Shown here: positions 1,659 to 56,045 of the stretch, in pieces
Layout: every line of letters begins with the position of its first letter
How positions within the stretch are numbered: the first letter of the stretch is position 1
Assembly: GCA_965112735.1 (NCBI GenBank)
Contig: OZ218960.1
Span: 2,108,001-2,172,000 of the forward strand
Direction: 5' to 3'
DNA length: 64,000 nt
Origin: Phaeosaccion multiseriatum
Taxonomy: Eukaryota; Protista; Ochrophyta, other classes
The notes under the pieces: model-generated
Databases searched by the model: none
Told to the model about the DNA's origin: nothing
The model's input: the letters and a program-made list of their open reading frames with translations, nothing else
Made by a program: the position numbers and the translations under genes

Positions 1659-3292
1659 TTACAATATCATTGGCGACACCTCCGCACTTGTGTCGAGTTT
1701 ACTCTCGCCTCGGCTCTTGGTACTGCATAGTTCGCGCCTAATTTCAGGAGTGATCTGGGGGTGGTGCTGCACCTTTAGCAGGTCCTTGAGTCTCTCTTTG
1801 TCGGCAGCCTTGATGTCTAGCTTGTAGCGCTGCGCAAAAGTCAAGATGCTCTGGTGCCACAGCACCGGAAGCTCTCGCGTTTCCTTGACGAAGCCCACAA
1901 AGTGGTCCACCAGCCTGTCGATGACCTGTTTGTTGCACACACGCAAGGGACAGGGATTGGGGTAGAGCAGCAAGGAAGGGGGTGTAAGTACAAAACAAAC
2001 CCACCGAGCCATCTATCAAGGCAGGGCGCTGCTCCCCATGCTCACCTTGAAGGGCAAGGAGTACTTCTTGTTGAGCAGCACGCGAATGAACAGGCTCGAG
2101 GCTCCGGAGTAGGGCATTTCGGCCAGCTTGAGCAGCGCCACAGCTGAGTGATTGGCCGGAATGGACACGCGCGCGAGCACAGATCCAAAGATGGTGGCCT
2201 CCCTGAGTGAGCAATTCCCAGAGCTGGCCAGGGGTAGCAATATGCCCTTGTAAAAGGCTGCCGGCTTGTACACACTCTTCATGAGTGACTCGTAGAGGTG
2301 GTAGTTGAGGCGTCGATTGTCGGAAACGTCTTCCCGACATCGCTCAAGCAAAAATACGTTGTAGAAGCGCTGCGCCATCCTGGGGTTAAAGTTGGAGGAG
2401 AATATCCGAGTCGCCGCGTACATAGCGTGAGCGCTCCATTGGTCGGGACGCGTTAGCCACAGCACCTCCTCCCAGTTGGTCAGCGAAGGAATAATCTTGA
2501 AGGCCTTTGGCAGCTTCCCCGCCGTATACCTGCTCAAAATCTTGCCAATCTGAGTGTATACTTCCACGACTTTGGGAGGCATGCTGTCCTCCTCCTGCTG
2601 TTGAGCACCCCCATCCTCATCATTCATTGCCGCCTCCTCCTTCTCTCTAATTTTGTCCATGATGATGTCAGCCAAGTTTCTTCTAGTCCCGCCACCCATG
2701 AAGCTCGACACTAGAGCCTCCTCCGAAGCGCTGAGCTGAGAAGCTCCATAGCCATAGTCGTTCTCATCGATGACTAGCTCCTCTTCTTCCTCGCTGTCAT
2801 ATTCCTCTTCTTGCACATCGACGTCCTCAATGTCGCTGTCCAAGTCTGCATAGAACGCTGAGGGGGGACCCCGCCCCGCCCCCCTTTTCTTGCCTTCTCC
2901 AGAGGACTGCTGCTCCTGCTCTTGTCGCTGCTTAGTCGCCTGCTCCAGAATCTTCTTGGTCATCCCAGGGCTTAGGAAAGCCTCCTCCTCCTCCTCCTCC
3001 TCCTCTTCGTCCTCCTCCCCCTCCTCCTCTCCGCCCTTCATCGCGGCCTTTTGCGCGCGACTGCTGTCCACGGGCCTTGCTCTGACAGCCACCTCGGTCA
3101 AGGCATCACGTGAAATCTGAGAGGCGTTCGTTGGACGAGGCGCAGAGTTAAACAGCAGCAGTACCAAGGGGCCAAGAGGGGAAAAGAGGGGAGGAGAGGA
3201 GACCTCATCTTGCACGTCAGTGCTCACACCTGCTTTCCCAAGGGATCATGTCTAAGAGCTGGACTCTTCTTCTCCCGCTTCTCCTTTGGCAT
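1659..3292 (-). CDS. BYSL: Bystin (ENP1/BYSL), 40S ribosome biogenesis factor, 3 exons
   Basis: MPKEKREKKSPALRHDPL start; conserved YTAGKLPKAFKIIP, WSAHAMYAATRIF, LNYHLYESLMKSVYKPAAFYKG, LPVLWHQSILTFAQRYK. Confidence 0.97.
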
Positions 3293-3535
3293 CGCTTCTG
3301 TTTTGTTGTTTGCTTGTTATTATATCGCGTTCACACAGCCCTTGATTTGAGAGGAGTGGACGACGAGGAGAGGGGGACAGTATGTCAATAAATCACAGAT
3401 GGCGCTCATAACCGCTCCTCTCTCTCTACTGTTCGCCTTAGATAAAGGCAATAAGAAATGGAAGTGCATTCCGCCGGCTTCTCTTGAGAATGAGGAGAAC
3501 ACTGCCGCTGGGGCGCGTGTGCCACTCTGCGTGCG

Positions 3536-6049
3536 ATGAGCCTAACATCGGGACTCGCCTGTGACGCGAGCAAGAATCCATGGCTTCGAGGATGGGAAAT
3601 TGGGGGTCTGAAGCTGCAAGAGGAGGGCGAACACGAGGACGAGGACGAGGGGCCGCAGGAAGGACCGCAGGAAGGTGAAGACGAACACGTGAAGCTCCTC
3701 TTGCTAGACCAACTCGGCGGTGTGGATGGCCTCCTTGCCCTTTTGCGAAGCAGCGAATGGCGAGTTGTCGAGCTTTCTTGTGCTCTCCTTTCCTGCCTGT
3801 GTGCTCATCCAGATGTGGCGGGTACCATACGTCAGCGGCTGCAGACGGACATTAGCAGCATAAGTCCTGTTCTCGAACGGGGACTTGGGCGTGAAGACCA
3901 GAGCGTTTGCAGCAACGCGTGCCTGCTAGTTACATGCTGCTTTACATTCTCCAAGGATGGAGGTGCGGCCCAACCGGGTAAGAACGTCGCTTCGAGCGTC
4001 GAGGAGGACATACCTCGGTTGATAGAAGCTCTGCTCGGTCTTTTGTCGGCGCACACTGCAGCTTCCCCTGGAAGAAAGGGCGCGGATCCTTTCGGAGACC
4101 CCCAGGAGGAACAGCAGCAGCCGCAGCAGGAGGAGTATCAGCAGGAGCAACAGCAGCCCCAGCCGCCGCCAACATGGGGAATTGTTGTGCTGAGCGCTCT
4201 TCTCGCATTGAGGGCTGTTGCTGACAGAAGCGCTTTTCTGGAAAGGGGGGCAGCACAGGCATGTTTCCGTATCGTTACGTCTCGTCACCAGAGCCCGCCG
4301 ATTCTGCCGAAGAGCGGTTCTTCCCCCGAAGTTGCTACCGAGGGCGATGCCAATTACGCAGAGGCCGCCGCACAACTTGCCGCCGAAGCTGTCCTACGGT
4401 GTGTGAGGTGTGCTGCCCGCTCGAGCAGCCCAGACGGAGTCTGCGCGAAAGATGAAGAGGCAATGGGATCCTTCCCGCAGACGGGACACCATGGTGTCGC
4501 TGAGTCCCTCGTTTCATTGTGTTCGCTGGCGGACCTTATATCCCTCCTAGAGACGGACAAGGAGCACATTCAAGCACTGGCACTGCACCTTATATCCGAG
4601 GCTCTGCGGAGAGGAGTTTTAGAAGCGAAGCGAGGGGAAAACGCTGGTCGTCGAAGGGCTAGCCTCAGCCATAGCGCAAGCTTCGGCCAGAGCAACAACG
4701 ACGACACCAGCGGTGCCAGCAGTGTGCGAAGGAAAAGAATCCTGTTGCGAAGCAAAAGTGAAACCCCGAGAAAGGAAGACGTGGCGGGTGGCTTTGGTGT
4801 ATCAGGGAATGGACATGCAGGTGTGAAAACCCAACGGCTGCCGCTCCTACTCTGCGGCACCGGTGCCGTGAGGGTGATTGTCTGGTTGCTGCAGCACCAG
4901 GAAGCTGAGGTTAGGAGCTGTGCACGCAAGGCGCTGTTGCATCTGACTTTCCTCCACCCGAAGTGGTTCTTGAGCTGCGTTGAGCAAGGTTGCGTTCCAA
5001 TCCTGATGCTTGGGCAAAGCAACAGGCGAGAAAGAGGTGACCGTGAGGAGAAGGGCGAGGCGTGTCAAACAACAAGCGAAGGCCAAGATGAGCTGGCGGA
5101 CGAGTTTCGGCAAGGTGTTCTTGAGCCTCTCCAACTACAGGTTTGCGGTCCGCTCTTGCCACACCTGAATCACATGATTTCATCGCCGGGCAACGGCCTT
5201 TCCCGCTCGAATGCCGCAGTGGCCCTGGTGCTTTTGTCTACTCGACAAGGCCTCTTGGGGGAAGAGGCGATTTCTGCGGTGCTGACAATGCTCCGAACTC
5301 CAGTCGGTCGCCCGCCTGCAGTGCTGGTCCTTCGCCTCCTTGCAGCGTTCGTGGATGAGCCAGCCCCCATTTGCAACACCTTTAGAGGCCCCCATACCGA
5401 AATGGAAGCCAGCGAGCTTTGGAGAGGTCAGGCGGCGATTTCGTCTGTGGACTCGGGAGGAGGCAAGGAGGAGGACTGCATTGTATTGATTTTTGACACA
5501 AGACTCGACGGCATTCCCGTGAAAATGGCGTGTCCTCCTGCATCTCTCCTCCGTCTCGCCAGCGCAAAGCTCGGCCGATTGTTGACTTGTGCGGATACGG
5601 ACGGTATGGAGGATCCTGAGACTGAGCAAGCGCCACCCAAGAAAAAATTGGCTGTTCTGTGTGGGCGTTATCGCGTCTGGGAGGAGGTCATGGGCCATTT
5701 GGCAGCCACTCATACGTTCACAAAGGCGGCTGAGGGTTATTCGATTGCCCTTCTTACGGACATGTTCAAAATCGCCACAAGCTACGAGCTGCTTGAGCTG
5801 GCGGACGGCTACGCAGTCGAGCTGTGGGGCAGGGTGCTTCATTCCGATTTGGCCGCGGCCTTCAAGCTTCTTCAAGCGGCCTCCGGCGCAGGACATTGGT
5901 GGTTGACGCGGCACGCCTTTGGTCGACTGGTGAGTCTTCTCGATACTGCGCGCGACGGCTCCCCCGCAGAAGGGGTGGGTATGAACGATCTTATCAGCTC
6001 CTTGCGAGCCTCCATCCTCCTCCTCCTCAGTAAACAGGGCAGTCAGTAG
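3536..6049 (+). CDS. Armadillo-repeat protein with degenerate C-terminal BTB/BACK-like region (ARMC5/ARIA-like architecture)
   Basis: 837-aa single ORF; ARM-like units (LGGVDGLLALLRS..VVELSCALLSCL; GAVRVIVWLLQHQEAEVRSCARKALLHL); C-terminal ASLLRLASAKLGRLL..DMFKIATSYELLEL resembles BTB. Confidence 0.6.
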   Translation: MSLTSGLACDASKNPWLRGWEIGGLKLQEEGEHEDEDEGPQEGPQEGEDEHVKLLLLDQLGGVDGLLALLRSSEWRVVELSCALLSCLCAHPDVAGTIRQRLQTDISSISPVLERGLGREDQSVCSNACLLVTCCFTFSKDGGAAQPGKNVASSVEEDIPRLIEALLGLLSAHTAASPGRKGADPFGDPQEEQQQPQQEEYQQEQQQPQPPPTWGIVVLSALLALRAVADRSAFLERGAAQACFRIVTSRHQSPPILPKSGSSPEVATEGDANYAEAAAQLAAEAVLRCVRCAARSSSPDGVCAKDEEAMGSFPQTGHHGVAESLVSLCSLADLISLLETDKEHIQALALHLISEALRRGVLEAKRGENAGRRRASLSHSASFGQSNNDDTSGASSVRRKRILLRSKSETPRKEDVAGGFGVSGNGHAGVKTQRLPLLLCGTGAVRVIVWLLQHQEAEVRSCARKALLHLTFLHPKWFLSCVEQGCVPILMLGQSNRRERGDREEKGEACQTTSEGQDELADEFRQGVLEPLQLQVCGPLLPHLNHMISSPGNGLSRSNAAVALVLLSTRQGLLGEEAISAVLTMLRTPVGRPPAVLVLRLLAAFVDEPAPICNTFRGPHTEMEASELWRGQAAISSVDSGGGKEEDCIVLIFDTRLDGIPVKMACPPASLLRLASAKLGRLLTCADTDGMEDPETEQAPPKKKLAVLCGRYRVWEEVMGHLAATHTFTKAAEGYSIALLTDMFKIATSYELLELADGYAVELWGRVLHSDLAAAFKLLQAASGAGHWWLTRHAFGRLVSLLDTARDGSPAEGVGMNDLISSLRASILLLLSKQGSQ

Positions 6050-6138
6050 ACCAGAAAACCTCTTACCTCTAGTCTAGTATTAAATAAAAATTAATTAATG
6101 AAGAACGAAGGTAGGTATGTACATGACTGTGTCAGTAT

Positions 6139-7025
6139 TTACTTTGTCTGGTCGCCACTTTCGACGAGCAGCTCCGGCGGCAAAGGCACTCTGTTCAAGC
6201 GGCGGTGGAACTCAGGGGGCGACATGCCTTCAACCTCGCAACACACGCCAACGAAGTTAACAGCAGCATCGCCTTCCACGCTTCGCAGTGCGCCCAAGTA
6301 GAGCTGCATCCAAAAGGGCGTGCCATTGGCTCTGTAGCTGACGAAGCACAGAGTTGTGTCCCTCGATGCGGCCACGTTGTTGTTAACTATGTCAATGCTA
6401 GTTTGAGTCGTGGACGGTCCACGCAGCAACATGCAGAGGTTTTGGCCCAGCACGCCCGCCTCCTCATGCCCAACAAGACTGAGAAATTTTTCACTCACGT
6501 ACAACAGAGTCAAGCTCGGATCTGTGAGAAAGAGCGCTTGCTGCGTCCTCGACAGAAGCTCCACCTGCTTCCTGTCATTTTCCATGAGCTGCAGTGCCGA
6601 TGGCACCCGTGATCCAATGTCGTCACTCCCCAAGCCCTGACCCGTGCGACTCACCCGCCCACGTGGTCGCGACCTCGGCAAAACGTCTTTCGCCGCCTTC
6701 TCACTGCCTGCAATCGTCTTTCGCTTCGCCTCCTCCAGCACTTGGTCGGCCTCATCGGGCAGGTGCCGCTTCACAATCGTAAGGAGGCGCATATTCTCCT
6801 TCCTCAACTTCAACAACTTCTCCTCCAAGCCCTCCAGCCGCTCCTTCTTTCGATTCCTCGACTTCTTTGCGTGCTCCCGATTTCGTGCTCGTTTGTAGCT
6901 CAGCTCACCACTATCCTCTCCGTCCTCCTCGTGGTCGTCGCTATCCTCGCCATGCCGGTGGTCCTCTTCCCGGGAAAGAGCAACTGACACCACATTTCTT
7001 CTCCTCCCTGTCCCTGCTGCCGCCC

Positions 7026-7060
<35 letters not shown>

Positions 7061-7464
7061 TCCTGCAGCTGCTCCTCCTCGGCCACGATGTCACTCTCAA
7101 GGTCGAGGCCCTTCACCTCCCGCCTTGCCTCGCGCTTGCGCAGAGTCATCCTGCTCGAAGATACTGTCGAAATCGCTGCTCCAAGAACGCTGGATTCGCC
7201 CCCCAGAGCAGCGTTTTCGAGCTGCTGCCCCGCCTTGGAAGGCGGCTTCTTCTCCAGAAAGGCCTCTGTAGTAGTCGCGGCGGTGGTAGTGGCAAAAGCA
7301 GCAGCAGCTGCAGCGAAGCTCGAGTCTAGCCCTTCCTTCTCAGGGAGGCAGCCGAAGGGGGGCTCCAAGAGAGACAGCGAGTCCTCATCGTCAAACGACC
7401 CGTCGAGCGACCCGGCGTTCCCCTCGAGGAAGCCCAGCCACGACACATTCCTCTTCATACACAT
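6139..7464 (-). CDS. Aureochrome-like bZIP-LOV(PAS) transcription factor with degenerate LOV domain
   Basis: bZIP KRARNREHAKKSRNRKKERLEGLEEKLLKLRKENMRL followed by LOV-like QQALFLTDPSL..VLGQNLCMLLRGPST..YRANGTPFWMQLYLGALR..NFVGV; start placed at first ATG (7464). Confidence 0.85.
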
Positions 7465-8620
7465 GGATGGTTGTTCAAGGCCCTGGAGCCAGGCGGTAGC
7501 TTGAGAAACAAACAAGTGGTCGAAAGAAAATCAAGAAAAAGAAAATGGCTCCCATCCACTGCCATCCCACGTCTGTGCTGGTCGTTCACAATCGTATTCG
7601 CAAAAAAAAAGAAGAGACCCTGACGCACTTAATCCTCGAGTGCGGATCGACAACAATGTTGGCGGCCGATAGCGCGCTATCGAGAATATGGCGAGGTGGC
7701 AGGCTGTCAGAAGCCAGCAGGGCAGCGGCGAGCTCCCCCCCCCCAAATATTTTTTTTCTCCCCCAGACCGTCTGGCCTGACGCCCGAACAGGGGGCTACG
7801 GCCCAGAAGCCAGGAGCCAGAGAAACCTAGTGCCCGGGGGGCCGATTACATGAGGGTGTCTCGCAGCCCAGAGCCCCCCCCCCCCCCCCCCCTAAAGTGC
7901 CTCTATCGTCGAGTTGAGCAGTTCTGGTACCCGAAGGAGGGGGGGGAAGGGGAGTGCAACAAGACCCTCAGAATATTTTGTTTGGATTAGTGGCACTGCG
8001 CTACGCGAATCGCCTTTTAGGTGTCTTGGAGGTGAGTGGGCTCTCTTACTGTCGCTTCTTCCTTCTTACAGCTCTAGCATCCATCTGCTACCTCGGGACG
8101 TGCCCGAAGCCTTATGACAACCTCGTTGGATGATTGTGGCCCGCGCCTGGGCCATTGGCATGGGCGAGGAGGGCACTGTCGGGTTGTGCTGGGAGAGCGG
8201 GGTGACGGCTCCCGTTGCCTCTGCTGAGGAGCTGGGCACAAAGGCCTGCGGCGTCGCTGCCCCTGCTGCTGATTGACCACCCTACCTTCAGTAAGACTGC
8301 CCTGAGCGCCTCGGGCAGTATGCACTCTGAACACTCCGCCCGACTTCTCGTCCTCTCTCAAGGATGGACTTCCTTCCGATGTGGCGGGGGTGAAAAGCAG
8401 CAGAGCCTTGTCGTTGAGAGCTCCAGTCGAGAGCTCCAGTAATCACACCATAACTGAGACCCTGCAAGTATCACATACAGCTCCGGGTCCGGGCATATGA
8501 TCGAATGGATTCGAAGCGAAGCGATACCAGCAAACCCCCCTTCAGCAGTGAGCGCAAGTCTGTCTCCCTAGAAGCAAGCCGATGAGTGGGCTGACTGCTC
8601 CCCTGCTTCACGCGTCAGGC

Positions 8621-9376
8621 TCAGGACTGATGCGAAATCTGCGTGTCCAATCGATGGTACGCTACGGTGGGGTCCCACAGTCCTTGGACTGTGGGGTTCT
8701 CCGACAAAACAGGGTGGGGAAGCCTCTTCATCTGTGTTGGGTTGGTTGGACCGGGGCAAGCGGTGCCGATCAGCAGTGGCAAGGGGGGGGCAGAGAGAAG
8801 GCACGTGCCTTTTTCGACCCGTAGGGAGGCACAGAGAATGAGACCGCACCTTTCTTCCACTCGAATTTCGCAGCTTCATGGCGAAATGTAGCACCTCATC
8901 GGCGTTCTTGTTCTTCACGTCCATCACCTTGGGCGGCCCTTTCACTGGAGTGGGAAGCAAAGAAAGCAGACGGAACAAACTTGAGTTCACAGTTTGTAGT
9001 CTTCTCTGCTCGCCTAACCCCACCCCCGCCCTCCTTGTAGTTCGCAGTCTCCTCTTCTCTGCGCACCATTAACCACGCCCCCACTCCCCACCCCAGTTCC
9101 CTCACGTCCCTTGGCGTGGATGAGCGAGGTGCGGCAAGAACCACAGGCCAACAACGCCCGACAAGAAAAACAGTAGCCTTACGTCTCACCATAAGTGCCC
9201 ACAAGGACGGGATGTCTCCCGGGCGTGATTGCAGTAGATATCGCCGTCTCGGGTGCCTTGGTGGCGTAGTCGACCAGATGCTTGGCCAGAAAGTCGATCG
9301 TCCCCCTGCTGCTGCCGCTGTGCCCGCAGTACTTAATCGTGAGAGACTTCAGCTGGAGCACGCCTCTTGTTGCCAT
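8621..9376 (-). CDS. MRPL43: Mitochondrial ribosomal protein mL43 (L51/S25/CI-B8 family), 3 exons
   Basis: MATRGVLQLKSLTIKYCGHSGSSRG..PGRHPVLVGTY / VKNKNADEV..KLRNSSGRK / PVLSENPTVQGLWDP. Confidence 0.92.
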
Positions 9377-14393: not shown

Positions 14394-15658
14394 TCAGGGT
14401 GTCTGCTGCTGCCGCTGTCTCTGGTTTGAGTGAAGCTGGTTGGGAGTTGTCCAGAGGGAAGAACCAAACGCCGACGAAGGATCCATGTTCTGAGTCGCTG
14501 CTTCCGCCCACCCACCTTGAGGCGGAGATGGAGAGGCCTTGAACATACCCAGGCCGTTGGTTGATGCCGACGAAGACTGACCTCCTCCGCCCCCACTTGG
14601 TCCTCCCGTAGACTGCGCTTCTCCCAGACTTTGCGTGCTCGTCTCCCCACCGAAGGACAGCGACACTCCAGGCAAGACCTTTTGCAAAAATGCCAAGCTC
14701 GACTGCAAGTCCTGCGACTTGTGGTTATTGGCGTTTCGACCGACCCCTGGAGAGCTTTGGTGTTGTCCTGCTGCTACCTCCGGCCCGGTGTCCCCCCCAC
14801 TTGGCGGTTGCGGAGCTCCGTTGCCCCGAGCGAATGCAAACCTACTTCCTCCCTTCGCCGCTGCTCCACCGGAATTGGCAAGCGAATTCACCGAGTCCAC
14901 TGGCGGGAGGGTGACACCCAACAAGCTTGCCAAAGCAGAAGAGCTTGACCCAAACGGGTCCACAGAAAGATCTACGACATGCGGCGGGTGCCCATTTGCT
15001 CCCGTACTGCATTGTTGCTGCTGCTGCTGCTGCAGCTGCTGTTGTTGCTGCTGCCGCTGCTGCTGCTGCTGCTCCTGCTCCTGCTGCCCCCTCGTCTCTC
15101 CATCTGATGTGGGTCGTGGAGCTGGAGCCGTCGGTCCCCTCAAAATACTGTCTGCACCTCCCTCAGCCACCATGGGAAAAAGAGAATTCCCAAACGCGTC
15201 GCCAAAAGGATTGGCATGGGGCGGCGGCGCGCCTTGAGCACCGCGAAAGCCCATCAAAGACTCCACCGAAAAAGCTTCCTGAGAATTGGGAGTAACTAAC
15301 CCGTCTGCCAAACCCGTCTTGCTCGCAGTGTTGACTGCATCAGATGTGAATGAGCCTGCTCCAAACATGCCGCCCCCTCCCTTGGCCGCTCCCTGCTGAC
15401 TCTCGTGAGGGCCTTGGAAGAGCTTTCCTTCCTTCTGGTTGCCGAGACCCTCCAAGCCAGGAGGAGGAGGTGGGGGGGGTGGGGGAGGGGGGGGGGGGGG
15501 CTTGCAGCATACTCCTTCCCCAGAAGAAGGCGGACCTCCCCCAAAGAGTGAATTCGAAAACATGGACGGCGGCGACGCGGGCTCTGATGCCTCACTCGAC
15601 CCAGCCACCTGCTCGTGGCCACCACCACCACTTGGCTGCGCCCTCTTGAAACCTCCTA

Positions 15659-15707
<49 letters not shown>

Positions 15708-15966
15708 ATGATGAGGGGGAGGCGGAGGCCGAAGAAGCTGTGACTGAGCTGCTGATGACGCTTCCCCTGGCATGCGCTTGATTTTCGAAGGTGATGGTGC
15801 TGATGCTGGTACTGTCGTCGGTGTTGCTGCTACCGCGGCTTCTCTCTGTGCAGCGAGCTGCTGCTGTCTGATCTGCTGCAGCTGCATGGTATTCAATGCT
15901 CCGCTGCTCTTGTGCTTGTCAGGCTGTTGCTGTTGCTGTTGCTGCTGCTTTTGCTGTTTTTGTGGC

Positions 15967-16014
<48 letters not shown>

Positions 16015-17726
16015 ACTCCCCTCTGCTGCGCCACCATCTGCGCGGGCGTAGGACCCCCCCCTCCTAGGGTCGGCCACTCGTCCGTTGCAAGAGTGCTTGG
16101 CTTACCCCCCCGGGCACCAGCTCCCTTCAAGTCCCCGTGAGCAGCCTCTCCACCCTGCCCAAGCCCCCTAACACTAAGTGGGAACGCCCCTGCGCTGCCC
16201 CTTCCCATAGCCCCCAACCTCTGTTTCCCAACCACATTTTTATCGTGTTGCTGCGAATTGGAGGTTCTGGAAGCGTGCGTGAAGCCTACTGCTCCTCCTC
16301 CTCCTCCTCCACCACCACCACCACCACCAGCACCCGCCCCTGCTACGGCTGCTGCTGCTGCTCCTGCTGTCCCAGTACCGGCGAAGTTTGGGGGAACTTG
16401 AGTCCCCCACACGCCAGAAGCCTGATCTCCGCTACTGCCACTGCTGCTGCTGCGAGCTCGCGGGCTTTGTTGTGAGAGTCTTGTGAAGGTCGAACTACAA
16501 AGGTCATACTGCTGCTGCTGCCGCAGTAGTTCCCCTGCTATCCGGGCGTGATCCTGCGCGGTCATTTTCGACAGTCCCAAACGCTGCTGCATCCTGGGGT
16601 CTGTGACTTCGAAGATGGGGGGGGGAAGAACAGGATTGGGGCATCGCTTCCCCGTCCCGCTGGGACCCCCCGCACCGACCGCAGTAGGCACTCCGTCTCG
16701 GAGCGGAGGGGCGAGTAGCGCGGACTTGTCTTGAATTTCCTCCTTGGTGAAGCGGTCATCGTCATTGCCCAAGTCGTGCAAATAGAGGCAGTCCGGGTTG
16801 TTGCATGGCAGGCCTCGAAGAAAAGAGTTGCAAAACTTGGTAGTGCCAAAGTTCGTACGCAGCTGCCTCCCTTCTAACATGTATCCGTCTACCGCCCGTA
16901 TCGAAGCCTGTGCGTCTTCCTTGAATGCAAAGGTAATGTAGGCGCTGGCGCTTCCATGGCGAGGATCCCCTGCAGGCACGCCCATATTCTGGTTCACCAC
17001 AATCTTGTGAATCCGCCCGTACTGCCCAAAGTACTCTGGTCGCCTCAGCGCGTCCTCCGAGGAGACTTGCAGGGGCAGGCCAATGACATAGACCAAATTG
17101 CGCTGCACAACCCGCATGTTGTTGAGGTCTCTGCTGCGATTCTTGTCCAAGAACCCAAAGTTGGCGGAAGCGAGCTGGTGCTGCTGGGCAGACGCTGCTC
17201 GAGCCGCTGCCAGGGGCGGACTACTGCTGCCGTCCTTGGGCGGAGAGCCTCCGGAGGAAATATCAATTGTCACTCCCCCCCCCGCCCCTTCGGACGCGCT
17301 ACTAGTGTTGCCGCCACTGCTGAAGTGATGGTGTTGTGCGTTGTGGCTGCTGCTGCTGCTGCTGCTGAAGTGAGCAATCCTCTGCTGCTGCTGATGATTT
17401 GACGCAAGCAAGGTGGCATTGGCCGTGGCTGCTGCCGCCGCCGCCGCCGCCGCCGCTGCCTGCTGCTTGGCCTCCTTCTTCTTCTTCCGCCGCTCCTTCT
17501 TGATGACATCCTCCCGGTCCACAGCCGCAAAAGCATGCGGATCATCCGAATACGGATTCCGACAAGCAGGACAAAGGCCATTCAGGTTGTCCTTGATATG
17601 GTGCCAGCACCACATACACACGCGATAGCCACAAGGACACGGCAGGAAATTCTTGTCGGACAGGTCGAGCTCTTCACAGCACAAAGGGCAAATGTCCTCC
17701 TCATCATCATCACTGGAGAACGTCAT
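14394..17726 (-). CDS. CNOT4: CCR4-NOT subunit 4 E3 ligase (C4C4 RING + RRM + CCCH), long low-complexity tail
   Basis: CPLCCEELDLSDKNFLPCPCGYRVCMWCW..CPACR; NMRVVQRNLVYVIGL..EYFGQYG; NFGTTKFCNSFLRGLPCNNPDCLYLH; SRFAFAR motif. Confidence 0.97.
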
Positions 17727-18057
17727 CCTGGACAAGCCAGAGCCGCCCCCGACCCCGTGGCCGTGAGGGGTTAAGAAATCCTGCTACGCTGCTGCGAATC
17801 GCCCTCCGCGCTTCTGATCACAAACGGAGTGGGGGACGGGGTGGGGGGAGAAAGAGGCAGCGGGTAGGAGGGCGCGTGGGTTAGCCCATGTACAAATACC
17901 TGCTGCTTTATTAGCCAAGATCCACAATAACCTGAGCAAGTATAATGGGAGGCTCCTTACCTTCCTTTGATGAAGGGAGGGGGATGCCCTATTAGAGATA
18001 AGTTTAGTACATTATATTTTTAATATAGAAGACCTCTACATTCTGGACCTTTCCTTT

Positions 18058-54386: not shown

Positions 54387-56045
54387 TCACGTCGTTCGAG
54401 TCTCGTGGAGACATTCGCGGAGAGAGGGGGGGCAAGGTTGGGGGTTTGGGGAGTGCCCTTTGGCTCCATCGTGTCGGCTTGTGAGGGATTCACACTCATG
54501 GCCGTCATCGCTATACTTCCTTTCAGAAAAATGCGACTTTGAAGCTCGAGGACTCGCAGAGAGAGGCTCTAACACAACATCCCGCCCTGGCGATCGAGAG
54601 CGGGGCATCTGGCGACCCCCTGCTGTCCGCTTAGAGTAGCCAGTCTTGTCGCCCGCACAATCCAGATCGCTAAAGGTTCCATCGCCAGAATACTCGGAGG
54701 GCCTCCCTCTTTTTGGCTGGTCCAGTGCCTCCAAAGACCGCTTCGAGGGCTTTCCCTCCGCGCGCTCCTCCGGAAGGGCAAGGTGTTTCAGCCTACGCGG
54801 GGAAGAAGGCTCGGTTCGAGGAGACGATGCCGACGGCAACGCACGCGCTACTGGCTGCAAGTCAAGGATGGTCAAGTTCCTCACTCGCAGCCAACAGTGG
54901 CTAAAGATTTCTGGCACCGAAGCCCTCTCGTTTGGATCAAGCTTCAGCATACGGTTGACAAGGTCTTTGGCTTCTGGCGAAATGTCGAGGTTGTCATCCA
55001 TCTTATACTGACCCTGCAGTATTCTCTGCCGAATAACCGACTCCATGGGTTGCTCGTCGCTGCTCAAATCTGATCTTTCGAACGGCAAGCGCCCGCACAG
55101 CAGGGCGAAAAGAATGACTCCCATGGCCCACACATCCAGAGGAGGGCCAGCGTTGCTGGTCCCGTGGAACACCTCTGGTGCTTGATAGCTCAGCGTACCA
55201 CAATTTGTGCGGACCGTCGCGCCCGGACGGTAAAAGTCGCTCAAGCCAAAGTCTGCTATCTTCACCCCATCTGCCAGCGAGTTCTTCTTCTTTAAAAGAA
55301 TGTTGTCAAGCTTCATATCGCGGTGGCAGATGTGCTGATTATGGGCATAGCCCACAGCACTCATAACAATGTGGAAGATCGATCTTGCCTCGTCCTCCTC
55401 CAACCGCTGGTCAGGCAAAGCGGAAAGATAGTGAAACATGTCGCCCCCTTCCATCAGCTCGAAGGCCAGCACAACATACTGCGGCGAGTCAATATGCTGG
55501 AGAAGTCTTATGATTCCAGGGTGCTTCAGGGAGGTCAGACATTGTATCTCCGTCGTAGTCCTCTCCGCAGCTCCCATATTGGCAATCTCGCTCTTTGCCA
55601 GAAATTTCAACGCCACCTTTTCTCCCGTCAGCATGTGGTCTCCCACCCTCACCTCCCCAAAGCCACCTTTCCCCAGAAATCCCTTCACCGTGAATCCCCC
55701 CACGAGCTCCGGGAGGCCTGAGGCTTGCAAGTCGTGCTCGTCTTCGCCCACCCGCTTAGAGACTGTCGGTGCTGCAAAATCTGCTCCGTTTGATACAAAA
55801 ATAATGGCATCGTCTTCCAACATCATAACGTCTGTCACCTCCAAGCCATCGCTATTAAAAACGCGATGAGGTGTGGAGGCCAGGTCTAGTCTCTGTTGGG
55901 CTGCGTTCAGCAAGTCATCAAGGCCCCAGCCCTCTCCGATCTGAAGAGCTTTCCAATCGTCTATTTTCCCATTCAGGTGGACCCTCACATGCTTCTGCCT
56001 GATCCTACTGCTGATATTCCCAAACTCTGACTCGTCCTCCAACAT
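54387..56045 (-). CDS. AMPK/MARK-related Ser/Thr kinase with N-terminal KHA/doublecortin-like domain
   Basis: LGKGGFGEV, VALK, HRDMKLDN, DFG, TNCGTLSYQAPE; N-terminal RVHLNG..LDDLLNAAQQRL..RVFNSDGLEVTDVMMLEDDAIIFVS. Confidence 0.9.
   Translation of the reverse strand: MLEDESEFGNISSRIRQKHVRVHLNGKIDDWKALQIGEGWGLDDLLNAAQQRLDLASTPHRVFNSDGLEVTDVMMLEDDAIIFVSNGADFAAPTVSKRVGEDEHDLQASGLPELVGGFTVKGFLGKGGFGEVRVGDHMLTGEKVALKFLAKSEIANMGAAERTTTEIQCLTSLKHPGIIRLLQHIDSPQYVVLAFELMEGGDMFHYLSALPDQRLEEDEARSIFHIVMSAVGYAHNQHICHRDMKLDNILLKKKNSLADGVKIADFGLSDFYRPGATVRTNCGTLSYQAPEVFHGTSNAGPPLDVWAMGVILFALLCGRLPFERSDLSSDEQPMESVIRQRILQGQYKMDDNLDISPEAKDLVNRMLKLDPNERASVPEIFSHCWLRVRNLTILDLQPVARALPSASSPRTEPSSPRRLKHLALPEERAEGKPSKRSLEALDQPKRGRPSEYSGDGTFSDLDCAGDKTGYSKRTAGGRQMPRSRSPGRDVVLEPLSASPRASKSHFSERKYSDDGHECESLTSRHDGAKGHSPNPQPCPPSLRECLHETRTT

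What the first reader, a model, noticed from the sequence alone, without database searches (positions are those of the whole stretch)
6139..6900. Aureochrome with a probably 'blind' LOV domain
Seen: intact aureochrome bZIP, but the LOV core reads GQNLCMLLRG instead of GRNCRFLQG, the PDNP loop is missing (DPSLTLLY), and flavin-contacting residues are replaced: NYR->SYR, FWNQ->FWMQ, and the signalling Gln VGVQ->VGVC. Established: LOV photochemistry needs the NCRFLQ Cys and these Asn/Asn/Gln contacts; aureochromes dimerise through bZIP and LOV, and non-flavin-binding members are known (AUREO2 type). Inference: a light-independent or dominant-negative partner, or a PAS domain re-tuned to another ligand or redox signal (note the new Cys residues).
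Basis: partly seen in the sequence, partly recalled or inferred. Interest (0 to 1): 0.7.

Follow-up and report, generated by a model that had tools for sequence, protein, structure and literature searches.

The report
Flavin-blind AUREO5-type aureochrome gene
This expressed algal gene encodes a light-receptor-type transcription factor (aureochrome) that has lost most of the residues that hold its light-absorbing flavin, so it most likely works without sensing light; such blind aureochromes are known, but not from this branch of the family.

Summary
A single-exon gene on the minus strand (7464..6139, 441 aa) encodes an acidic/polyQ N-terminus, an intact aureochrome bZIP (NREHAKKSR) and a C-terminal A'alpha-LOV-Jalpha module.

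Only 2 of the 8 polar flavin contacts survive. There is also a 3-residue deletion of the PDN loop and one extra residue in the NCRFLQ motif. Among 174 aureochrome-type LOVs, 160 lose none or one contact.

The gene is not AUREO2-like. It sits in a well-supported clade with brown-algal AUREO5 (SjAUREO5). Within that clade it groups with three other heavily degenerate proteins: one from Chrysoparadoxa australica, one from a transcript contig and one from a metagenome.

The gene is transcribed: unspliced contigs cover the ORF in two RNA-like runs. The ORF is intact despite a long branch, and two degenerate relatives show dN well below a saturated dS. The domain still models as an aureochrome LOV fold.

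Best reading (about 0.72): a light-independent bZIP-PAS factor that keeps the ex-LOV domain for dimerisation or regulation. Partner choice and any dominant-negative role are untested.

Blind aureochromes are already known (AUREO2). What is new is a separate and far more radical loss, in AUREO5. The scan had not noted this before on other DNA.

The parts
6139..7464 (-). Whole coding sequence: 441 codons plus stop, single exon. ATG at 7464-7462, TAA at 6141-6139.
   Evidence: ORF list and sequence. Unspliced RNA-like contigs cover 3441/4437-7011 and 7088-7465/7493. GC3 is 0.70.
7351..7410 (-). Acidic/hydrophobic N-terminal stretch (SLDGSFDDEDSLSLLEPPFG), a possible activation motif.
   Evidence: Read directly from the sequence. 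It resembles the acidic N-terminal motifs of SjAUREO3/4 printed. Inference only.
7027..7059 (-). Run of 11 Gln (aa 136-146) inside a CAG repeat that breaks short-read contigs.
   Evidence: read laying skipped 7012-7087 as a repeat.
6844..6894 (-). bZIP basic region KRARNREHAKKSRNRKK. It has N-x7-R and the aureochrome-typical His.
   Evidence: Pfam bZIP_1 scores 28.2 bits (cut-off 27.6) and bZIP_2 28.7 (cut-off 22.3). N195, R196, H198, A199 and R203 are invariant in A3. The His signature is described in 10.1101/2022.05.19.492614.
6760..6837 (-). Short leucine zipper. The d positions are L213, L220, L227; the a positions are L217, N224, V231.
   Evidence: L213, L220, N224 and L227 are invariant in A3. 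The heptad register was read from the sequence.
6610..6759 (-). Variable linker between bZIP and LOV.
   Evidence: Alignments A1 and A3.
6541..6609 (-). A'alpha cap with the AUREO5-clade motif RVPSALQLMEND.
   Evidence: The motif is shared with SjAUREO5 and relatives. The model has a helix at residues 7-23.
6232..6540 (-). LOV-derived PAS core (aa 309-411).
   Evidence: Pfam PAS_9 29.2 bits (cut-off 27) and PAS 25.6 (cut-off 22.6). Best solved relatives are aureochrome LOVs, E about 5e-20. The model core has pLDDT above 95. Foldseek's best matches are 6i21, 5a8b, 5dkk and 3ue6.
6505..6516 (-). Site of the 3-residue deletion of the PDN loop (SL|TL).
6418..6447 (-). Degenerate E-alpha motif GQNLCMLLRG, one residue longer than GRNCRFLQG.
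6376..6390 (-). IVNNN: the second phosphate-binding Arg (AsLOV2 R467) is replaced by Asn.
   Evidence: 160 of 174 relatives keep Arg.
6331..6339 (-). SYR: flavin-binding Asn (N482) replaced by Ser.
   Evidence: 170 of 174 keep Asn. Ser occurs only here and in P0051.
6304..6315 (-). FWMQ: flavin-binding Asn (N492) replaced by Met.
   Evidence: 157 of 161 filled rows keep Asn. Met occurs only here and in P0051.
6238..6249 (-). GVCC: the signalling Gln (Q513) replaced by Cys.
6166..6219 (-). J-alpha and conserved tail PPEFHRRLNRVPLPPELL, shared by the AUREO4/5 lineages.
   Evidence: The model has a helix at residues 133-142.

Best explanation
The gene encodes an AUREO5-clade aureochrome. The layout is an acidic/polyQ N-terminus, a bZIP, a linker, and A'alpha-LOV-Jalpha. 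The LOV-derived domain has lost the flavin-binding site and so no longer acts as a blue-light sensor.

Shown here:
- The architecture, the intact DNA-contact residues of the bZIP, and a short zipper with Asn at an 'a' position.
- Loss of 6 of the 8 polar flavin contacts, two indels at the pocket, and bulkier or more hydrophobic pocket residues (V416F, L480F, N492M, R451M).
- A retained PAS fold with its flanking helices.
- Transcription of the gene, and clade membership next to three similarly degenerate relatives.

Inferred:
- The protein binds TGACGT-like sites as a dimer whatever the light.
- The ex-LOV PAS domain is kept as a dimerisation or bZIP-regulating module.
- Through zipper and PAS contacts the protein may pair with flavin-binding aureochromes and so modulate their light response. 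The zipper has one like-charged g-e' pair (K216/R221) and lacks the attractive E-R pair of AUREO4/5 relatives. That is a weak hint of heterodimer preference.
For: - Architecture and bZIP.
- Closest solved relatives are aureochrome LOVs.
- Contact table: this protein reads N-C-M-R-N-S-M-C against the consensus N-C-R-Q-R-N-N-Q. Of 174 aureochrome-type LOVs, 105 keep all 8 contacts and 55 lose one.
- The PDN deletion is unique and the motif is one residue longer.
- Phylogeny: a starred 20-row clade with SjAUREO5 (99/88, and 99/87 without the trait columns). Inside it is a starred 5-row subclade (95/84), and the four degenerate rows form one clade at 98/71.
- Constraint: the 441-codon ORF is intact on an end branch of about 1 change per site. 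WIN-P0051 has dN 0.55 with dS saturated. P0051-P0075 has 64% amino-acid identity, dN 0.31, dS saturated.
- Expression: runs X1 and X5 carry spliced contigs of the neighbouring gene, so they are RNA-like, and they cover this ORF unspliced, ending at 7465 and 7493. The DNA runs X2 and X4 read on to 7819.
- Precedent: PtAUREO2 and VfAUREO2 do not bind FMN, in PtAUREO2 through a Met in the cavity (PMC4937327; PMC13737086).
Against: - No biochemistry: loss of flavin binding is inferred from residues alone.
- Asn449 and a Cys next to it remain, and LOV variants that lack the phosphate-binding Arg can still hold riboflavin (titles of PDB 7qf2-7qf4).
- The AlphaFold model leans on an alignment of canonical LOVs, so the retained fold is not independent evidence.
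- The degenerate rows are long branches, so their grouping may owe something to long-branch attraction.
- dS is saturated, so the omega values are rough.
- No close orthologue exists in the collections, so constraint on this lineage itself is not measured.
- Partner proteins in this genome were not examined.
Confidence: 0.72

Rival explanations
1. The domain still binds a chromophore or another small ligand in a non-canonical way, for example riboflavin or lumichrome without the phosphate contacts, or a hydrophobic or redox-active ligand. It would then sense light weakly, or sense redox or a metabolite, with Cys344 and/or Cys408 taking part.
For: The PAS fold and the pocket-forming secondary structure are kept. 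Asn449 and an adjacent Cys remain, and Q513 is Cys here and in P0048. The domain is conserved among degenerate relatives, so it does something. miniSOG Arg mutants solved with riboflavin show that the phosphate contacts are dispensable for flavin binding (PDB titles).
Against: Both Asn that hydrogen-bond the isoalloxazine are gone. Four pocket positions became bulkier or more hydrophobic. The four degenerate relatives do not share a common new set of pocket residues: their motifs read NLCMLLR, SLKQLLA, NLQILT and SWKILV. That argues against a shared new ligand. Only one Cys is new.
Confidence: 0.18
2. It is a decaying or functionless duplicate. The LOV half drifts neutrally and the transcript is noise.
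For: The end branch is long (1.0-1.16 changes per site against a median of 0.3). The indels are unique. No close orthologue was found.
Against: The 441-codon frame has no stop or frameshift despite that divergence. By my own rough estimate, not a tool result, neutral change of that size should have introduced many stops. The bZIP contact residues and the structural PAS residues (G, Y, GTPFW, the tail) are kept. RNA-like contigs from two studies cover the ORF. Relatives with the same kind of loss persist in at least three other sources. GC3 of 0.70 is above the CDS's overall GC of 0.59, a bias often seen in coding sequence, though no other gene of this genome was measured for comparison.
Confidence: 0.06
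3. It is an assembly or reading artefact: a frameshifted or chimeric canonical aureochrome.
For: None found. The CAG repeat at 7012-7087 does break short-read contigs.
Against: Four runs from two studies, DNA-like and RNA-like, match the window with no other letters or indels across 6139-7011 and 7088-7465. The substitutions are spread across the domain and in frame.
Confidence: 0.01

Closest known systems
AUREO5 subfamily of brown algae (e.g. SjAUREO5 of Saccharina japonica; group V in PMC9416419)
   Same: Same starred clade. Same architecture. Shared motifs: RL.GLEE in the zipper, RVPSAL.LM before the LOV core, and the tail (E)FHR.L.RVPLP. The signalling Gln is also replaced in the brown-algal members, by Leu or Met.
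   Different: Brown-algal AUREO5 keep NCRFLQ, both Arg and both Asn, so 7 of 8 contacts, and have PDCP in the loop. This protein keeps 2 of 8, has the loop deletion and the longer motif, is intronless, and shares only 41-44% identity.
Degenerate AUREO5-like proteins: Chrysoparadoxa australica CAM9489832.1 (P0047), a Logan SRR16343740 transcript contig (P0051), and JGI metagenome 3300034482 (P0075)
   Same: Nearest relatives on the tree. They lose 7, 8 and 6 of the 8 contacts. P0051 shares N482S, N492M and the 11-residue motif length.
   Different: Only 37-50% identical. Each has different replacements in the E-alpha motif. None has the PDN deletion. None is described in the searchable literature.
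AUREO2 / class II aureochromes (VfAUREO2, PtAUREO2)
   Same: bZIP-LOV proteins whose LOV does not bind flavin. In PtAUREO2 a Met in the cavity blocks binding, and a non-sensory role is proposed (PMC4937327, PMC13737086).
   Different: A different subfamily. AUREO2 lacks the bZIP His (SjAUREO2 reads RNRVLARRTR) and keeps most pocket residues: 9 of 11 according to 10.1101/2022.05.19.492614, and 7 of my 8 in SjAUREO2. Here the loss is far more radical, and the bZIP carries the His.
Canonical aureochrome 1 LOV domains with solved structures (PtAUREO1a 5a8b/5dkk, VfAUREO1 3ue6, Ochromonas 6i20)
   Same: Best sequence matches (E about 5e-20) and best structural matches (Foldseek E about 1e-12). Same A'alpha-core-Jalpha layout.
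   Different: Those bind FMN and photocycle, with all 8 contacts present.

Membership tests
Aureochrome (stramenopile bZIP + C-terminal LOV) | N-terminal bZIP followed by a C-terminal LOV/PAS domain in one chain | tested here: met
   Pfam bZIP_1/bZIP_2 at ORF residues 208-250 and PAS_9 at 327-425, all above their cut-offs.
Aureochrome (stramenopile bZIP + C-terminal LOV) | bZIP basic region N-x7-R with the aureochrome-typical His (NREHAK.SR) | tested here: met
   NREHAKKSR; N195, H198, A199 and R203 are invariant in A3. The signature is described in 10.1101/2022.05.19.492614.
Aureochrome (stramenopile bZIP + C-terminal LOV) | LOV domain closest to aureochrome LOVs rather than to phototropin or bacterial LOVs | tested here: met
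   Aureochrome LOVs score E about 5e-20 against 1e-10 to 1e-11 for the others. Foldseek's top 19 matches are aureochrome LOVs.
Aureochrome (stramenopile bZIP + C-terminal LOV) | Flavin binding and a blue-light photocycle | not testable with these tools
   Needs recombinant protein and spectroscopy. The sequence argues against it.
LOV photosensor domain | GXNCRFLQ motif with the adduct-forming Cys in register | tested here: not met
   GQNLCMLLRG is one residue longer. R451 is M and Q454 is R. The Cys is either displaced or not homologous.
LOV photosensor domain | Polar flavin contacts N449, C450, R451, Q454, R467, N482, N492, Q513 (AsLOV2 numbering, from my knowledge of LOV structures) | tested here: not met
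   2 of 8 are kept. 160 of 174 relatives keep 7 or 8.
LOV photosensor domain | PAS fold with five-stranded sheet and flanking A'alpha/Jalpha helices | tested here: met
   AF2 model with pLDDT 85 (core above 95) and the expected order of elements, plus the Foldseek matches. The model depends on an alignment of canonical LOVs.
AUREO5 subfamily | Falls in one clade with named AUREO5 (SjAUREO5) | tested here: met
   P0004 was identified as SjAUREO5 from the supplement of PMC9416419. The clade is starred at 99/88 and 99/87.
AUREO5 subfamily | Shared clade motifs outside the pocket (RVPSAL.LM cap; FHR.L.RVPLP tail) | tested here: met
AUREO2 (class II, non-flavin-binding) | AUREO2-type bZIP (no His in the basic region) and AUREO2 clade membership | tested here: not met
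   The His is present, whereas SjAUREO2 reads RNRVLARRTR. This protein sits in the AUREO5 clade. No labelled AUREO2 row was in my tree, so the clade part rests on the AUREO5 placement alone.

The most novel reading that the evidence does not exclude
An old subclade of AUREO5 aureochromes is shared by this alga, Chrysoparadoxa and at least two unsampled ochrophytes. It turned a LOV photosensor into a flavin-free PAS module that has been kept under selection across class-level splits. It works either as an obligate heterodimer partner that sets the gain of the light-sensing aureochromes, or as a sensor of a different signal. The AUREO5 family as a whole runs from canonical, through Cys-to-Met and Gln-to-Leu forms, to fully degenerate. 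It would then be a natural series showing how a photoreceptor is dismantled step by step while the transcription factor is kept.
Probability: 0.3. Interest if true: 0.6.

Novelty: new variant of a known kind. Interest (0 to 1): 0.42.

Why it matters
Aureochromes are the main blue-light transcription factors of stramenopile algae and are used as optogenetic scaffolds. So far, flavin-free members are documented only for AUREO2, where the pocket is almost intact.

A second, independent and much deeper loss in the barely studied AUREO5 branch, kept in several lineages, would show two things. Losing photochemistry while keeping bZIP-PAS is a recurrent and selected outcome. And aureochrome networks contain light-blind subunits.

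It also gives a natural set of sequences for asking which LOV residues matter for fold and dimerisation as opposed to chromophore binding. For this genome's annotation, the practical point is that the gene should not be labelled a blue-light receptor.

Tried and rejected
- The first word search with the whole protein was swamped by low-complexity words and gave one hit. Restricting it to residues 185-440 fixed this.
- The exact-sequence look-ups used coordinates one codon off (7461 and 7455 instead of 7464 and 7458), so they say nothing. The look-up repeated with the right CDS found no record.
- The exhaustive representative search found no relative above 55% identity. A meaningful dN/dS on this lineage was therefore impossible. 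Pairwise estimates against P0051 and P0075 have saturated dS and serve only as a rough sign of constraint.
- The AUREO2 reading was considered and rejected on the bZIP His and the clade placement.
- The 'new cysteines, hence redox sensor' idea was checked: three of the four Cys are family-typical.
- There is no TGACGT 'aureo box' in the gene's own upstream region (7465-8000). The window's count of 28 is within chance, with 20.4 expected.
- The organism could not be named. The neighbouring bystin gene is 70-75% identical to brown algae, Phaeothamnion and Chrysoparadoxa. It is therefore an ochrophyte near the brown-alga/xanthophyte group that is absent from the protein collection.
- Earlier scan notes on LOV and bZIP genes elsewhere in this genome gave context only.

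Full report
**Gene and observation**

The finding lies in a 458-codon open frame on the minus strand, 7515..6139. The first ATG is at 7464, so the product is 441 aa. There is no sign of an intron. Contigs of four public runs match the window without a single difference or indel across 6139-7011 and 7088-7465. They break only at a CAG repeat at 7012-7087, which encodes 11 Gln.

Pfam finds bZIP_1 and bZIP_2 (28.2 and 28.7 bits) and PAS_9 and PAS (29.2 and 25.6 bits), all above their curated cut-offs. Against the PDB, the best sequence matches of the C-terminal 193 residues are the aureochrome LOV domains of Ochromonas (6i20-6i25), Phaeodactylum (5a8b, 5dkk, 6t73) and Vaucheria (3ue6, 3ulf), at E about 4e-18 to 5e-20. 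Phototropin and bacterial LOVs follow at 1e-10 to 1e-11.

**How unusual the LOV domain is**

I took the relatives found by the word search and by an exhaustive phmmer search of 1.84 billion representatives. That search gave 4201 hits at E up to 0.001, with a best identity of 44-55%.

I aligned 174 aureochrome-type LOV domains and read the eight polar flavin contacts. In AsLOV2 numbering these are N449, C450, R451, Q454, R467, N482, N492 and Q513. The list comes from my knowledge of LOV crystal structures.

- 105 rows keep all eight contacts and 55 lose one, usually the Gln.
- The window protein reads N-C-M-R-N-S-M-C, so six are replaced. These include both Asn that hydrogen-bond the isoalloxazine ring and both Arg that hold the phosphate.
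- Four pocket positions become bulkier or more hydrophobic: V416F, L480F, N492M and R451M. This recalls the Met that blocks the cavity of PtAUREO2 (PMC4937327).
- The three-residue PDN deletion is unique among rows that cover that part.
- The E-alpha motif is one residue longer than in all canonical rows. Only P0051 has the same length.

HMMER aligns the remaining Cys with the photoactive Cys, with a Leu inserted before it. But the three nearest relatives carry Leu, Leu and Trp at that column, so its homology is open. Either way it is out of register.

Of the four Cys in the core, three stand in columns where Cys is the family majority. Only Q513C is new.

**Which aureochrome it is**

The best named hits were brown-algal 'putative LOV domain-containing proteins' and Tribonema 'aureochrome 4'. 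The supplement of the Saccharina aureochrome-family paper (PMC9416419) shows that P0004 is SjAUREO5. Its sequence there carries the same ...RRVPSALKLMSPCYQSVK... stretch.

A careful maximum-likelihood tree of 85 LOV modules puts the window protein in a starred 20-row clade (99/88). That clade holds all the brown-algal AUREO5 rows plus P0048, P0041, P0047, P0051 and P0075.

I rebuilt the tree after removing the trait's own columns: the motif, the four contact columns outside it with two neighbouring I-beta columns, and the loop.

- The 20-row clade stays starred (99/87).
- A 5-row subclade becomes starred (95/84): P0041 plus the four degenerate rows.
- The four degenerate rows form one clade at 98/71, which is not starred.

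Motifs outside the pocket agree with this placement. They are RL.GLEE in the zipper, VP[SN]A[LI].L[MI]E before the core, WxQLY.GALR, and the tail EFHRRL.RVPLP.

The protein is therefore an AUREO5-type aureochrome, not an AUREO2-type one. It has the aureochrome His in NREHAK. AUREO2 lacks that His (10.1101/2022.05.19.492614; SjAUREO2 sequence).

**A graded series within the clade**

| Row | Source | State of the flavin site |
|---|---|---|
| P0117 | fragment | Canonical where visible |
| P0041 | Logan transcript contig | Only Cys to Met |
| Brown-algal AUREO5 | several species | Only Gln to Leu or Met, and PDCP in the loop |
| P0048 | JGI | Loses 4 of 8 contacts |
| Window protein | this window | Loses 6 |
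| P0075 | JGI metagenome | Loses 6 |
| P0047 | Chrysoparadoxa australica CAM9489832.1 | Loses 7 |
| P0051 | Logan SRR16343740 | Loses 8 |

The window protein and P0051 share N482S, N492M and the longer motif. The replacements inside the motif differ in every member: NLCMLLR, SLKQLLA, NLQILT and SWKILV. That looks like release from flavin-related constraint rather than convergence on a new ligand.

The long end branches (window 1.0-1.16, P0047 1.37, P0048 1.3-1.6, against a median of 0.3) mean that the internal order, and whether there was one loss or two, are uncertain.

**Is it a live gene?**

Runs X1 and X5 carry contigs of the neighbouring minus-strand gene with two introns removed (8732-8849 and 8945-9189, with CT..AC ends). 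X5 also has very uneven depth. I therefore read both as RNA-like, although X1 is labelled 'DNA?'. X2 and X4 have flat depth and unspliced contigs, so they are DNA.

The RNA-like contigs cover the ORF unspliced and stop at 7465 and 7493, whereas the DNA contigs read on to 7819. That fits a transcript start shortly upstream of the ATG. Contigs cannot give strand or level.

The frame is intact over 441 codons, although the protein's end branch is about one change per site. Under neutral drift of that size, many stops would be expected. This is my rough estimate, not a tool result.

Codon comparisons give these values:

| Pair | Amino-acid identity | dN | dS | omega |
|---|---|---|---|---|
| Window vs P0051 | 46% | 0.55-0.57 | saturated (2.0 by NG86, 21 by ML) | 0.28 (NG86), 0.03 (ML) |
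| P0051 vs P0075 | 64% | 0.31 | saturated | 0.06 (ML) |

These figures are rough, but they point to constraint on the degenerate domain.

An AlphaFold2 model of aa 284-441, built on a 55-row alignment, has mean pLDDT 85 and above 95 in the core. It shows the order A'alpha, five strands with the C/D/E/F helices, then J-alpha. Foldseek's best PDB matches are aureochrome LOVs. The model leans on canonical homologues, so it shows compatibility with the fold, not proof of it.

**Mechanism**

Shown: an intact bZIP, a short zipper with Asn224 at an 'a' position as in other aureochromes, a kept PAS fold with cap and tail, and a lost flavin site.

Inferred: the protein binds ACGT-core sites as a dimer independently of light. 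The ex-LOV domain serves dimerisation or intramolecular control of the bZIP, as LOV does in AUREO1.

In PtAUREO1a and 1c the bZIP drives heterodimerisation (PMC4937327). The window zipper has a like-charged g-e' pair (K216/R221) and lacks the E-R pair seen in AUREO4/5 relatives (read). That is a weak hint that it prefers a partner.

Whether it activates, represses or acts as a dominant negative is not addressed by any result here.

**Comparison with what is known, and novelty**

Non-flavin-binding aureochromes are established for VfAUREO2 and PtAUREO2. A 2026 survey also discusses light-independent early-branching AUREO-like genes (PMC13737086). AUREO2 keeps 9 of 11 pocket residues, or 7 of my 8 in SjAUREO2.

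The case here is in another subfamily, is much more radical, and is shared by a small group of lineages. AUREO5 itself is hardly characterised: one preprint even treats the Ectocarpus gene as LOV-only. I found no paper mentioning aureochromes together with Chrysoparadoxa or Schizocladia.

I rate it a new variant of a known kind, of moderate interest.

**Context**

The window is ordinary nuclear DNA of an ochrophyte. It holds bystin (2016-3227, minus), a CNOT4-like RING+RRM protein (14394-17735, minus) and a protein kinase (54387-56045, minus).

Bystin is 70-75% identical to brown algae, Phaeothamnion and Chrysoparadoxa. The species is close to that group but absent from the protein collections.

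Noticed in passing
window 4437-7011 (and 3437-4461): In the RNA-like run X5, one contig at depth 485 spans 4437-7011. That covers the aureochrome ORF plus 1.7 kb beyond its stop, antisense to the 3' half of the convergent plus-strand ORF. Meanwhile 3437-4461 is covered only by fragments at depth 2-10. Either the aureochrome mRNA has a very long 3' UTR overlapping its neighbour, or the neighbour has an internal start near 4440. Contigs cannot tell the strand.
   Followed up: partly
window 3536-6049 (+): An 837-aa open frame with no Pfam family, convergent with the aureochrome gene. Its stop lies only 90 bases from the aureochrome stop. X5 shows a fixed T>C at 4798 (485 of 485), which could be a strain difference or editing.
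   Followed up: no
window 7979-9300 (-): The neighbouring minus-strand gene has two introns, 8732-8849 and 8945-9189 (GT..AG on the minus strand). They are removed in contigs of X1 and X5. This is what revealed that those two runs are RNA-like, although X1 is labelled 'DNA?'.
   Followed up: partly
window 7549-7570 and 7790-7925: Low-complexity C-rich/G-rich stretches upstream of the gene. Many contigs of the DNA runs end there or join to unrelated sequence, so this is probably a dispersed simple repeat.
   Followed up: no
P0002-P0007 (brown-algal AUREO5), alignments A1/A3: All brown-algal AUREO5 rows have the signalling Gln of I-beta replaced by Leu or Met (VGVLCEV), and PDCP instead of PDNP, while keeping the rest of the flavin site. 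In phototropin LOV2 the Gln-to-Leu change is known (from my knowledge) to uncouple photochemistry from signalling. So brown-algal AUREO5 may photocycle without canonical output.
   Followed up: partly
L004 220-1518 (P0041, Logan SRR29150329): A full-length AUREO5-like protein whose only pocket change is Cys to Met (GRNMRVMQG). It may be a flavin-binding LOV that cannot form the adduct.
   Followed up: no
P0040 (3055 aa) and P0050 (4197 aa): Very long proteins with 9-10 LOV-like stretches each were among the top hits. They are probably helmchrome-type multi-LOV proteins. Earlier scan notes report such genes in this genome too.
   Followed up: no
window 2016-3227 (-), 14394-17735 (-), 54387-56045 (-): Ordinary housekeeping neighbours: bystin, a CNOT4-like RING + RRM protein, and a Ser/Thr protein kinase with a ubiquitin-like N-terminal piece.
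   Followed up: partly
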